From positions 1 to 20,066 of the forward strand of contig NW_021824434.1 of NCBI RefSeq assembly GCF_006345805.1: a stretch of DNA of 20,066 nucleotides. Reading direction: 5' to 3'. Origin of the DNA: Octopus sinensis (taxonomy: Eukaryota). Position numbers and translations under genes: made by a program. Positions 10,231-12,330 of this stretch are shown here, piece by piece; within the stretch, counting starts at the first letter, position 1; the number at the start of each line of letters is the position of its first letter. The notes below the pieces were generated by a model. That model was not told the origin of the DNA. It made no database searches and worked only from the letters and a program-made list of their open reading frames with translations.

Positions 10231-12330
10231 AATAATTCGAGAAAAAACCACTATTTTAAAACCAACAAGGAAAGACTTAATCAATACATAAAATTTTAAT
10301 ATAAATTAAATAAACCGCCACTACAAATGTTTCTGTCTGCTACCGACAATCTTCAGGTGGATTTTCGATCTTCTAATCAGTATCAAATTTTGAAGTGAAT
10401 TTGATACTGATTAGAAGATCGAAAATCCACCTGAGATTGTCGGTAGCAGACATGAAACATTTGTAGTGGCGGTTTATTAATTTATATTAAATTTTATGTA
10501 TTGATTAAGTCTTCCTTGTTTGGTTTTAAAATAGTGGTTTTGTCTCGAATTATATTATATAAATTTTACTATAAAATTGGATTTAACCCTAAATCTGATT
10601 TTCCCTGTAATTTTGGATTCATTCCCTAATATTTATTATTATTATTATATATATATATATATGTATATATATATATTATATTATATATAATATATAATAT
10701 ATATATATATATTATATATAATAATAAATATTAGGGAATAAATCCAAATTTACAGGGAAAAAATCAGATTTAGGATTAAATCCAAGTTTATAGTAAAATA
10801 TTATATAATATTAATTCGAGACAAAACCACTATTTTGCAAAACAAACAAGGAAAGACTTAATCAATACATAAAATTTTAATATAAATTAAATAAACCGCC
10901 ACTACAAATGTTTCTGTCTGCTACCGACAATCTTCAGGTGGATTTTCGATCTTCTAATCAGTATCAAATTTTGAAGTGAATTTGATACTGATTAGAAGAT
11001 CGAAAATCCACCTGAGATTGTCGGTAGCAGACATGAAACATTTGTAGTGGCGGTTTATTAATTTATATTAAATTTTATGTATTGATTAAGTCTTCCTTGT
11101 TTGGTTTTAAAATAGTGGTTTTGTCTCGAATTATATTATATAAATTTTACTATAAAATTGGATTTAACCCTAAATCTGATTTTCCCTGTAATTTTGGATT
11201 CATTCCCTAATATTTATTATTATTATTATATATATATATATATGTATATATATATATTATATTATATATAATATATAATATATATATATATATTATATAT
11301 AATAATAAATATTAGGGAATAAATCCAAATTTACAGGGAAAAAATCAGATTTAGGATTAAATCCAAGTTTATAGTAAAATATTATATAATATTAATTCGA
11401 GACAAAACCACTATTTTGCAAAACAAACAAGGAAAGACTTAATCAATACATAAAATTTTAATATAAATTAAATAAACCGCCACTACAAATGTTTCTGTCT
11501 GCTACCGACAATCTTCAGGTGGATTTTCGATCTTCTAATCAGTATCAAATTTTGAAGTGAATTTGATACTGATTAGAAGATCGAAAATCCACCTGAAGAT
11601 TGTCGGTAGCAGACATGAAACATTTGTAGTGGCGGTTTATTTAATTTATATTAAATTTTATGTATTGATTAAGTCTTTCCTTGTTTGGTTTTAAAATAGT
11701 GGTTTTGTCTCGAATTATATTATATAAATATTTACTATAAATTGGATTAACCTAAATCTGATTTTTCCCTGTAATTTTGGATTCATTCCCTAATATTTAT
11801 TATTATTATTATATATATATATATATATATATATATATGTATTATATAATATATATATATATATATATATATATATATATATATATATATATATATAATA
11901 ATAAATATTAGGGAATAAATCCAAATTACAGGGAAAAAATCAGATTTAGGATTAAATCCAATTTTATAGTAAAATATTATATAATATTAATTCGAGACAA
12001 AACCACTATTTTGCAAAACAAACAAGGAAGACTTAATCAATACATAAAAATTTTTAATAAAAGAAATAAACCGCCACTACAATCGTTCATCATGTCTTCA
12101 ATGACATTCGTCAGGTGGATTTTCGATCTCCTAATCTGTTTAATTTATGAGTCATAAATTAAAAGATTAGGAGATCGAAAATCCACCTGACGATGTCATT
12201 GAAGACATGAAACGATTGTAGTGGCGGTTTATTTCTTTATATTAAAAATTTTTATGTATGATTAAGTCTTTCCTGTTTGTTTTGCAAAATAGTGGTTTTG
12301 TCTCGAATTAATATTATATATATATATATA
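10231..12330. repeat. Array of four long fold-back palindromes separated and flanked by (TA)n
   Basis: Hairpin centres at 10390-10397, 10971-10978 and 11552-11559 (loop TTGAAGTG) and at 12151 (TGA-G-TCA). Arms are up to about 247 bp, e.g. 10720-11221. Period is 581 bp for the first three units. Confidence 0.95.

What the first reader, a model, noticed from the sequence alone, without database searches (positions are those of the whole stretch)
10231..12330. Palindrome of palindromes: alternating head-to-head and tail-to-tail array embedded in (TA)n
Seen: a roughly 250-bp half-unit repeats in strictly alternating orientation with two junction types, a tight hairpin centre (8-nt loop TTGAAGTG, or a 1-nt loop) and a (TA)n spacer. 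It has no ORF and no recognisable transposase. Established: this alternation is the geometry produced by fold-back or rolling-hairpin copying and by hairpin-ended linear DNA. MITEs normally have short TIRs around a non-palindromic interior. Inference: a non-autonomous, fully palindromic, (TA)n-associated element family, possibly propagated through hairpin intermediates by an unidentified enzyme.
Basis: partly seen in the sequence, partly recalled or inferred. Interest (0 to 1): 0.78.

Follow-up and report, generated by a model that had tools for sequence, protein, structure and literature searches.

The report
Tandemly duplicated fold-back repeats in TA microsatellite
A short tandem array in an animal-like genome alternates a 320-base hairpin-forming repeat with a second inverted repeat centred on a TA microsatellite; it looks like ordinary fold-back transposon-type DNA copied by unequal recombination, not a new hairpin-copying system.

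Summary
Eight half-units lie at 10217-12325 in strict + - + - alternation (blastn E 1e-53 to 1e-130), with 8-nt or 1-nt hairpin centres and (TA)n junctions. No coding capacity was found.

The alternation follows from geometry. The array is a direct tandem repeat of period 581 nt, and its unit holds two palindromes. A is about 318 nt with 153-161-nt arms and TA flanks. B is two roughly 90-nt arms around a 79-92-nt TA-rich spacer. The order is A1-B-A2-B-A3-B-A4.

A stretch of 1333 nt (10264-11596) repeats exactly at period 581. Adjacent inverted halves, by contrast, differ by indels and substitutions. The last copying events were therefore direct duplications, not fold-back or rolling-hairpin copying.

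Outer-arm markers (A1 alpha/alpha, A2 and A3 beta/alpha, A4 beta/beta) fit two unequal crossovers starting from an A1-B-A4 ancestor. A4 differs from A1-3 by 11-12 substitutions per inner arm, and these are mirrored in both arms.

The closest known kind is the (TA)n-targeting fold-back MITEs of plants (MuTAnT, SaTar, TAFT, Micron).

Copy number, target-site duplication and an autonomous partner could not be tested, because no related sequence exists in any collection available here. Verdict: new member of a known kind, modest interest.

The parts
10174..10234 (.). Left flanking (TA)n microsatellite, about 29 repeats. It abuts A1.
   Evidence: TRF period 2, 29 copies, 96% matches. Sequence read.
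10235..10550 (.). A1: 316-nt palindrome ATTCGAG...CTCGAAT. Arms are 10235-10389 and 10398-10550, with loop TTGAAGTG at 10390-10397. The outer-arm marker is alpha on both arms. TA lies on both sides.
   Evidence: Arm against arm: 152 matches, 1 substitution, 7 gap columns. Markers. Coordinates.
10551..10813 (.). B1: inverted repeat centred on a TA-rich spacer. B_L arm 10553-10640, spacer 10641-10719 (79 nt), B_R arm 10720-10810. Each arm carries about three degenerate 20-nt subrepeats (AGGGAATAAATCCAAATTTAC).
   Evidence: Arms: 84 matches, 4 substitutions, 3 gap columns. TRF period 20-21, 3.0-3.4 copies, 70-72% matches. 86% A+T.
10814..11131 (.). A2: 318-nt palindrome with loop 10971-10978. The left outer arm is beta and the right outer arm is alpha, so it is a hybrid.
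   Evidence: 153 matches, 0 substitutions, 9 gap columns between arms. DNA fold -158 kcal/mol, z = -35.6. Markers.
11132..11394 (.). B2: exact copy of B1. B_L 11134-11221, spacer 11222-11300, B_R 11301-11391.
   Evidence: 10264-11015 is identical to 10845-11596 at offset 581. Arm comparison. DNA fold -84.9 kcal/mol, z = -18.3.
11395..11715 (.). A3: 321-nt palindrome with loop 11552-11559. The marker pattern is beta/alpha, a hybrid as in A2. The central 56-nt arms are perfectly complementary.
   Evidence: 156 matches, 0 substitutions, 6 gap columns. Inverted repeat I1/I17, 56 nt at 100%.
11716..11989 (.). B3: older copy of B with a longer, purer (TA)n. B_L 11718-11804, spacer 11805-11896 (92 nt), B_R 11897-11987.
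   Evidence: It differs from B1 and B2 mainly by one-base indels.
11990..12308 (.). A4: 319-nt variant palindrome. The centre is G at 12151. Arms are 11990-12150 and 12152-12308. The marker is beta on both arms. The inner arms differ from A1-3 by 11-12 substitutions plus 9-13 gap columns, mirrored in both arms.
   Evidence: Inner arms of A4 against each other: 95 matches, 0 substitutions.
12309..12335 (.). Right flanking TA-rich tract (TAATATTA(TA)n...AATATT), followed by unique sequence.
10264..11596 (+). A 1333-nt stretch with exact period 581 (2.29 units). It marks the most recent direct tandem duplication.
   Evidence: A 752-nt mismatch-free run at offset 581.

Best explanation
The locus is a short tandem array (period 581-595 nt, order A1-B-A2-B-A3-B-A4). 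It is built from two non-coding fold-back modules that sit in a TA microsatellite.

Module A is a roughly 318-nt, almost fully palindromic element of the fold-back / long-TIR MITE type, flanked by TA. Module B is a second inverted repeat whose centre is a (TA)n tract.

Inferred history:
1. Two related but distinct A elements, alpha-type A1 and beta-type A4, came to lie on either side of B inside one TA-rich tract. This is the arrangement seen in microsatellite-targeted modular transposon clusters.
2. An unequal homologous exchange between the outer left arm of A4 and that of A1 created a hybrid A and a second B.
3. A second, very recent unequal exchange added the third unit.

The strict alternation of orientation is an automatic result of repeating a unit that contains two palindromes.

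What is shown and what is inferred. Shown: the anatomy, the direct-duplication signature, the hybrid marker pattern and the lack of coding capacity. Inferred: that A was mobile, mobilised in trans by a DDE transposase acting on its termini, and that the TA tracts are its target or were expanded on insertion.
For: - Eight alternating half-units, and none elsewhere in the window.
- The terminal half-units are both truncated at the A/B boundary, so the array begins and ends with a complete A. That is what exchange between A copies predicts.
- 1333 nt of exact period 581, spacer included, while adjacent inverted halves differ.
- Marker pattern alpha/alpha, beta/alpha, beta/alpha, beta/beta. Exact periodicity starts just inside the marker, at 10264.
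- A arms show 0 substitutions in 153 positions against 4 in 88 for B arms (Fisher p = 0.017). A and B are therefore separate modules of different age or behaviour.
- A4 and A1-3 differ by 11-12 mirrored substitutions per inner arm, yet each palindrome has 0 substitutions between its own inner arms.
- All eight A ends abut TA.
- No ORF, Pfam hit or homologue.
- Published precedents with the same anatomy: MuTAnT, 292 bp with 144-bp TIRs in (TA)n; SaTar, 380-425 bp with 150-180-bp TIRs in microsatellite-linked modular arrays.
- Mutator, Tc1-mariner, hAT and piggyBac families are reported in an octopus repeat annotation. This is relevant only if the window is cephalopod.
- Two more TA-linked palindromic modules lie at 5439-5732 in the same window.
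Against: - Only one locus is available. No second copy of A or B was found in the other 18 kb of the window or in any searchable collection. Those collections hold essentially no DNA of this organism, so multi-copy status and mobility remain untested.
- A target-site duplication cannot be read in TA-rich, self-complementary flanks.
- No autonomous partner is present. The termini of the mariner-like relic in the window are unrelated to those of A.
- The A/B junctions on the two sides of B are near mirror images. This also fits a single inverted duplication.
- The higher conservation of the outer arm than the inner arm is not statistically robust once indels are counted.
- Many arm differences are one-base homopolymer indels, which could be assembly errors.
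Confidence: 0.55

Rival explanations
1. Local, non-mobile origin. The palindromes arose in place by fold-back priming or hairpin-capped break repair, at a short inverted repeat for A and at the self-complementary (TA)n for B. The arms of A were later kept alike by conversion within the palindrome. The array then grew by direct unequal exchange. No transposon family is involved.
For: - (TA)n is self-complementary and lies exactly at the centre of B.
- A second TA-centred palindrome (5472-5559) and a loose 2.2-kb inverted structure (6744-8944) lie in the same window.
- The A/B junctions on the two sides of B are near mirror images.
- Fold-back priming next to short palindromes is an established route to inverted duplications (PMC7999016).
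- No second copy was found anywhere.
Against: - It needs 11-12 substitutions plus indels per arm to have been copied arm to arm in A4 or A1, while the B arms, of the same supposed age, kept 4 unconverted differences.
- Fold-back priming as described yields chromosome-scale dicentric palindromes rather than 300-nt units.
- Small, discrete, TA-bounded, non-coding modules with long inverted arms are the typical anatomy of fold-back MITEs.
Confidence: 0.25
2. A family of fully palindromic elements multiplies through hairpin or snap-back intermediates (rolling-hairpin-like copying) with the help of an unidentified enzyme, and the alternating array is a direct product of that copying.
For: - The head-to-head and tail-to-tail alternation matches the geometry of rolling-hairpin concatemers.
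- Two variants of A have unrelated-looking central sequences, yet both are palindromic down to an 8-nt or 1-nt centre at the homologous position.
Against: - Copying through a hairpin makes neighbouring inverted copies exact complements. Here neighbouring inverted halves differ, while same-orientation halves 581 nt apart are identical over 752 nt.
- The hybrid marker pattern is explained by ordinary crossovers.
- No Rep/HUH-type or other ORF is present in the array.
Confidence: 0.05
3. Assembly or sequencing artefact. The fold-backs or the copy number come from chimeric or palindromic long reads, or from mis-assembly of a TA-rich region.
For: - 1333 nt of exact periodicity.
- Differences that are mostly one-base homopolymer indels, a common feature of imperfectly polished long-read assemblies.
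Against: - Read-level palindromic chimeras join kilobase-scale segments at arbitrary points. They do not create eight 150-250-nt halves with two defined junction types.
- A4 is a consistently diverged variant with mirrored changes.
- The B arms differ by real substitutions.
- The same arm-specific indels recur in independent copies.
Confidence: 0.05
4. Functional hairpin-RNA locus. The A palindromes are precursors of small RNAs (miRNA- or siRNA-like), or are double-stranded RNA substrates for editing, and arm symmetry is kept by selection on the RNA stem.
For: - Very stable hairpins.
- Mirrored differences between A4 and A1-3 preserve pairing.
- Rfam reports sub-threshold resemblance of the A centres to long-hairpin miRNA precursor families.
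Against: - Every Rfam match is well below its gathering score (for example 77 against 117 bits), falls on both strands, and also appears on plain microsatellite palindromes. The matches therefore reflect generic hairpin shape.
- There is no expression data.
- A survey of mollusc small RNAs found little evidence that Dicer processes long double-stranded RNA (PMC12479628).
- This reading would not exclude a transposon origin.
Confidence: 0.07

Closest known systems
MuTAnT, a Mutator-like (TA)n-targeting fold-back MITE family of Medicago truncatula (PMC4486113)
   Same: - Small, non-coding and almost wholly palindromic: 292 bp with 144-bp TIRs, against about 318 nt with 153-161-nt arms here.
- Strong hairpin propensity.
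- Embedded in (TA)n tracts of up to tens of repeats.
- The target-site duplication is unreadable inside the microsatellite.
- Subfamilies exist.
   Different: - MuTAnT is a plant family; this window looks animal.
- MuTAnT termini are GGGG/CCCC, while A begins ATTCGAG.
- MuTAnT has 218 mapped copies, a 9-bp target-site duplication in non-TA sites and an autonomous mudrA-type partner. None of these could be examined here.
SaTar elements and their modular arrays (guayule, rice), with the related TAFT (maize) and Micron (rice) elements (PMC5907723)
   Same: - Elements of 380-425 bp with 150-180-bp TIRs, mostly flanked by (TA)n.
- Chains of intact elements linked by microsatellite without nesting.
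- This resembles the chain (TA)n - 162-nt block - (TA)n - A - B - A... here, and the chain of TA-linked modules at 5378-5771.
   Different: - SaTar arrays are built from unrelated elements by separate insertions. Here the A-B repetition is shown to be direct tandem duplication, so at most the A1-B-A4 core could be modular insertion.
- The MULE affiliation (10-bp target-site duplication, autonomous element) is untested.
Drosophila fold-back elements, including Tetris (PMC4079207)
   Same: - Non-autonomous elements dominated by long inverted arms that contain short tandem subrepeats. The B arms here have about three 20-nt subrepeats.
- Fold-back elements can seed tandem arrays or satellite DNA.
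   Different: - In Tetris the amplified unit is a 220-bp repeat inside the TIR. Here the whole element plus its neighbour is the repeat unit.
- No sequence similarity was tested or expected.
Palindromic AT-rich repeats (PATRRs) of human chromosomes (review PMC7999016)
   Same: Near-perfect palindromes of a few hundred bp with AT-rich centres that can extrude as cruciforms and promote breakage and exchange. B plus its spacer is 86-88% A+T.
   Different: - PATRRs are described as more than 90% AT, unrelated to each other and not mobile or tandemly arrayed.
- A is only 70% A+T.
Tandem-repeat-containing MITEs of bivalve molluscs (DTC84 / pearl-related; PMC3879986)
   Same: A molluscan precedent for composite MITEs that combine tandem repeats, a microsatellite segment and palindromic motifs thought to drive changes in copy number.
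   Different: DTC84 has short inverted repeats, core repeats arrayed inside the element and an AA putative target-site duplication. It is not a full palindrome.
Rolling-hairpin replicons and hairpin-ended linear DNAs (from my own knowledge, not fetched)
   Same: Alternating head-to-head and tail-to-tail junction geometry.
   Different: - Those systems encode a nicking or resolving enzyme, and they give exact complementarity between neighbouring inverted copies.
- Neither holds here.

Membership tests
Fold-back / long-TIR MITE (structural class) | Small size (under about 800 bp) and no coding capacity | tested here: met
   A is 316-321 nt. The longest stop-free stretch in the array is 81 aa, with no Pfam hit or homologue.
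Fold-back / long-TIR MITE (structural class) | Terminal inverted repeats that make up most of the element | tested here: met
   Arms are 153-161 nt with 0-2 substitutions. Loops are 8 nt or 1 nt.
Fold-back / long-TIR MITE (structural class) | Target-site duplication at the ends | tested here: inconclusive
   TA abuts all eight ends, and TAATATTA abuts both ends of A4. The flanks are TA-rich and self-complementary, so neither observation is diagnostic.
Fold-back / long-TIR MITE (structural class) | Many dispersed copies with different flanks | not testable with these tools
   No other copy lies in the window. The metagenome, viral and prokaryote collections gave only chance 18-mers or nothing. 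The source genome is absent from the protein collection.
(TA)n-targeting MULE derivatives (MuTAnT / SaTar / TAFT) | Insertion inside (TA)n or another microsatellite | tested here: met
   (TA)29 lies to the left, a TA-rich tract to the right, and short TA tracts at every A/B junction.
(TA)n-targeting MULE derivatives (MuTAnT / SaTar / TAFT) | Target-site duplication of 9-10 bp in copies outside microsatellites, and TIRs shared with an autonomous mudrA-type element | not testable with these tools
   This needs the source genome. No transposase is present in the 20-kb window apart from a mariner-like relic and a non-LTR RT.
(TA)n-targeting MULE derivatives (MuTAnT / SaTar / TAFT) | GGGG/CCCC distal TIR nucleotides (MuTAnT only) | tested here: not met
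   A begins ATTCGAG and ends CTCGAAT. If the element were instead read as B_R-A-B_L, it would begin ...TTAGGGAAT and end ATTCCCTAA, which is only a loose resemblance.
Tc1/mariner-derived (Stowaway-like) MITE | TA target-site duplication plus TIRs matching a Tc1/mariner element | tested here: inconclusive
   The TA flanks are present but uninformative. The only mariner-like relic in the window (about 15500-16330) has unrelated termini, TATCAAAAAGTTCC....
piggyBac-type MITE | TTAA target-site duplication and CCC...GGG termini | tested here: not met
   TTAA lies on both sides only for A4. A1-A3 have TTAT on the right and A1 has ATAA on the left. The termini are not CCC/GGG.
Helitron / Helentron non-autonomous elements | 5'-TC ... 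CTRR-3' ends inserted between A and T, with a 3' subterminal hairpin | tested here: not met
   The ends are TA|ATTCGAG ... CTCGAAT|TA, with no CTRR end, and the whole element is the hairpin.
Rolling-hairpin or hairpin-telomere replicon | Neighbouring inverted copies are exact complements, and a nickase or resolvase gene is present | tested here: not met
   Adjacent inverted halves differ, while direct copies 581 nt apart are identical. No ORF is present.
PATRR-type non-mobile AT-rich palindrome | Near-perfect palindrome of several hundred bp with more than 90% A+T | tested here: not met
   B is 86-88% A+T and A is 70%. B's arms are 84 of 88 identical.
Rfam miRNA precursor families (MIR837, MIR5185, mir-580 and others) | Score at or above the family's gathering threshold | tested here: not met
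   The best match is 77.3 bits against a threshold of 117. Matches fall on both strands and also on simple-repeat palindromes.

The most novel reading that the evidence does not exclude
Palindromy in this family is regenerated by the copying mechanism itself. A single arm ending in self-complementary (TA)n snaps back and primes synthesis of its own complement, so new copies and new subfamilies (A1-type, A4-type) are born as perfect fold-backs. This would be a hairpin-primed mode of propagation for a nuclear animal repeat. It would account for both variants being symmetric right down to their different centres, and for the TA-centred palindromes elsewhere in the window. The evidence rules this out only for the last two amplification steps, not for the origin of the palindromes.
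Probability: 0.07. Interest if true: 0.75.

Novelty: new member of a known kind. Interest (0 to 1): 0.3.

Why it matters
If the reading is right, this is an animal counterpart of the microsatellite-targeting fold-back MITEs so far described mainly in plants. I suspect the animal is a cephalopod, but that is untested. The locus would also be a clean small example of how two palindromic modules plus unequal crossing-over produce a palindrome-of-palindromes array without any hairpin copying.

Practical consequences:
- Such loci are likely hot spots for cruciform extrusion, replication stalling, copy-number change and mis-assembly.
- They generate long perfect hairpin RNAs if transcribed.
- They interfere with microsatellite marker design.

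Nothing here suggests a new enzyme or a cellular function.

Tried and rejected
1. External copies by DNA pattern.
- The 18-mer CAGGTGGATTTTCGATCT gave 21 metagenome and 2 viral loci, each with a single match and no wider similarity on BLAST. These are chance hits.
- A 26-mer, a 22-mer terminus and a second 18-mer gave no hits in the prokaryote genomes, and no hits or one lone 18-mer in the viral contigs.

2. External copies through the protein collection.
- An 81-aa stop-free translation of the element found no candidate.
- A 78-aa translation of the window's abundant SINE-like repeat found nothing.
- An exact look-up of a window ORF found no record.
- The RT ORF's best relative has only 54% identity, and its contigs share nothing with the array.

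3. Literature by sequence string and by keyword. There were no hits for element or SINE strings, and no paper combines 'foldback' with 'cephalopod'.

4. Rfam. Only sub-threshold, generic hairpin matches appeared.

5. Helitron, piggyBac and mariner end signatures were not met or were uninformative.

6. Reading the 251-nt half-unit pair (B_R-A-B_L) as one fold-back element. This is less likely for two reasons. Both array ends stop exactly at the A/B boundary. The A arms have 0 substitutions in 153 positions against 4 in 88 for the B arms (p = 0.017).

7. The argument that conserved termini and a diverged interior prove a transposon. I dropped it, because the contrast disappears once indels are counted.
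Full report
CONTEXT

The 20-kb window looks like animal nuclear DNA that is dense in repeats. It contains:
- many (TA)n, (AAT)n and (CA)n tracts;
- seven copies or fragments of a SINE-like repeat of about 225 nt;
- a degenerate non-LTR reverse transcriptase at about 1500-4360 (RVT_1, E 1.9e-29);
- a mariner-like relic near 15500-16330 (read).

From memory, the composition and the SINE resemble cephalopod genomes. I could not test this. The best database relative of the RT has only 54% identity, and translations of the SINE and of the element found nothing.

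blastn of the proposed half-unit (10720-10970) finds eight copies between 10217 and 12325, in strict + - + - + - + - order. E-values run from 1e-53 to 1e-130, and no copy lies elsewhere in the window. Two conserved motifs occur eight times each, against 0.01 and 0.10 expected from shuffles.

The junctions match the description. Three centres have the 8-nt loop TTGAAGTG, one has a 1-nt centre at 12151, and three junctions are TA-rich spacers of 79, 79 and 92 nt. Single-strand DNA folding gives -158 kcal/mol (z = -35.6) for one central palindrome and -84.9 kcal/mol (z = -18.3) for one TA-centred unit. I found no coding capacity: stop-free stretches reach at most 81 aa, with no Pfam hit and no homologue.

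ANATOMY

The first and last half-units are truncated at the same internal position (79 of 251). The half-unit is therefore composite, made of two modules.

- Module A is a palindrome, ATTCGAG...CTCGAAT, of 316-321 nt. Its arms are 153-161 nt, and TA abuts all eight ends. The four copies are A1 10235-10550, A2 10814-11131, A3 11395-11715 and A4 11990-12308.
- Module B is a second inverted repeat (10551-10813, 11132-11394, 11716-11989). Each arm is about 90 nt and holds about three degenerate 20-nt subrepeats (TRF). The arms face each other across an imperfect (TA)n spacer.

The order is (TA)29 - A1 - B - A2 - B - A3 - B - A4 - TA-rich tract.

THE ARRAY GREW BY DIRECT DUPLICATION, NOT FOLD-BACK COPYING

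At an offset of 581 nt the sequence is identical over a 752-nt run: 10264-11015 equals 10845-11596. This amounts to 1333 nt of exact period 581, complex spacer included.

Neighbouring inverted halves are not exact complements. The A arms differ by 6-14 one-base gap columns, and the B arms by 4 substitutions and 3 gap columns in 88 positions. Copying through a hairpin would give the opposite pattern. The alternation of orientation is therefore simply what results when a unit holding two palindromes is repeated head to tail.

A CROSSOVER HISTORY CAN BE READ FROM MARKERS

An outer-arm marker exists in two forms: alpha (TTTTAAAACCAAAC) and beta (TTTTGCAAAACAAAC). The pattern is A1 alpha/alpha, A2 beta/alpha, A3 beta/alpha, A4 beta/beta. 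Exact periodicity begins at 10264, just inside that marker.

Two steps explain this:
1. The ancestor was A1-B-A4. An unequal exchange between the outer left arm of A4 and that of A1 made a hybrid A (beta outside, A1-like inside) and a second B.
2. A second, very recent exchange within the shared interior added the third unit. This explains why units 1 and 2 are identical, while unit 3 (the right arm of A3, plus B3) carries extra differences.

The model also explains why the array starts and ends with a complete A.

TWO VERSIONS OF A

The inner 95 nt of each A4 arm differs from A1-3 by 11-12 substitutions and 9-13 gap columns. Within every palindrome, however, the two inner arms show 0 substitutions in 92-95 positions. 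The centres lie at homologous positions but differ in sequence, and both are symmetric. So the arms co-vary.

There are two ways to explain this:
- (i) A1 and A4 are separate insertions of two subfamily members of a palindromic mobile family.
- (ii) They are sister copies from one inverted duplication around the (TA)n of B, and each has since been homogenised arm to arm.

I favour (i). Under (ii), B's arms would be of the same age, yet they keep four unconverted substitutions (0 of 153 against 4 of 88, Fisher p = 0.017). In addition, the anatomy is that of known fold-back MITEs. Option (ii) is not excluded, because the A/B junctions on the two sides of B are near mirror images. An apparent contrast between conserved termini and a diverged interior vanishes once indels are counted, so I do not use it as evidence.

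COMPARISON WITH WHAT IS KNOWN

- MuTAnT in Medicago is a 292-bp element with 144-bp TIRs. It is flanked by (TA)n, its target-site duplications are unreadable inside the microsatellite, it has subfamilies and it has an autonomous Mutator-like partner (PMC4486113).
- Guayule and rice SaTar elements include families of 380-425 bp with 150-180-bp TIRs, 77-95% of them microsatellite-flanked. They are often chained without nesting through microsatellite linkers. TAFT and Micron behave similarly (PMC5907723).
- Fold-back elements can seed tandem arrays, as Tetris does (PMC4079207).
- Composite MITEs with tandem repeats and microsatellites are known in bivalves (PMC3879986).
- PATRRs and fold-back priming are the known non-mobile analogues for TA-centred palindromes (PMC7999016).

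The window itself shows more TA-linked palindromic modules, at 5439-5560 and 5605-5732, and a 162-nt block bracketed by (TA)n just left of A1. Every complex palindrome in the window lies within 2 nt of a TA tract, although only 11% of the window lies within 40 nt of one.

WHAT COULD NOT BE DONE

No collection available here holds this genome, and all DNA-pattern scans returned chance hits or nothing. Four things therefore remain untested: copy number, the target-site duplication in complex DNA, an autonomous partner, and read support.

Most differences between arms and between units are one-base homopolymer indels, which may partly be assembly errors. The substitutions in B and in A4 are not of that kind.

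VERDICT

This is a genuine, well-described structure, and its geometry has an ordinary explanation. The most likely reading (0.55) is fold-back, TA-associated non-autonomous elements amplified locally by two unequal crossovers. A purely local fold-back origin followed by the same direct duplications is the main rival (0.25). Hairpin-mediated propagation by a new enzyme is not supported for the steps that can be read (0.05).

I rate it a new member of a known kind, with interest 0.3.

Noticed in passing
window 5439-5560: A second complex palindrome. Arms are 5472-5515 and 5516-5559 (44 nt, at most 2 mismatches), and the centre is TA-rich (TATATATATGTATATA). It lies between (TA)n tracts at 5378-5433 and 5561-5608. 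Like B, it is an inverted repeat centred on TA.
   Followed up: partly
window 5605-5732: A palindrome with 25-nt arms (CAATTAAAAATGAGGGTGTC..GACACCCTCATTTTTAATTG) abuts the (TA)n at 5561-5608. The 124-nt module it begins ends near the next (TA)n, at 5742-5771. Together with the previous item this makes a chain of the form (TA)n-module-(TA)n-module-(TA)n.
   Followed up: partly
window 9885-10234: A 162-nt unique block (10012-10173) is bracketed by long (TA)n tracts (9885-10011 and 10174-10231), immediately left of A1. It has no inverted termini and no other copy in the window.
   Followed up: partly
window 9656-9880, 18394-18606, 8845-9068, 4480-4647, 4770-4882, 6739-6836, 19986-20044: Seven copies or fragments (78-91% identity) of a SINE-like repeat of about 225 nt, in both orientations. 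Rfam gave no tRNA or other match at E <= 1, and a translated search found no relatives.
   Followed up: partly
window 6744-8944: A loose inverted structure of about 2.2 kb. SINE fragments at 6744-6870 and 8819-8944 are inverted at 80% identity. A (CCA)n-rich block at 7119-7718 faces a (TGG)n-rich block at 8140-8695 at about 70%. GC skew runs from -0.68 to +0.68 across the structure.
   Followed up: partly
window 1500-4360: A degenerate non-LTR retrotransposon (RVT_1 E 1.9e-29; a zf-RVT match at E 2.8e-05 that falls just below Pfam's cut-off, 25.1 against 27.5 bits) with stops and frameshifts. It is bracketed by long (AAT)n tracts on both sides (1440-1510 and 4350-4430). The closest database RT has only 54% identity.
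   Followed up: partly
window ~15500-16330: A short mariner-like relic with inverted termini TATCAAAAAGTTCCCGGACTAA / TTAGTCCGAGAACTTTTTGATA. Its ORF fragments resemble the C-terminal end of a mariner transposase by eye, but Pfam gave no hit. The termini are unrelated to those of palindrome A.
   Followed up: no
window 13890-15010: A 1.1-kb strongly G/T-skewed block of degenerate trinucleotide repeats (GAT/GGT). It yields long spurious ORFs on both strands, such as 14082-15113.
   Followed up: no
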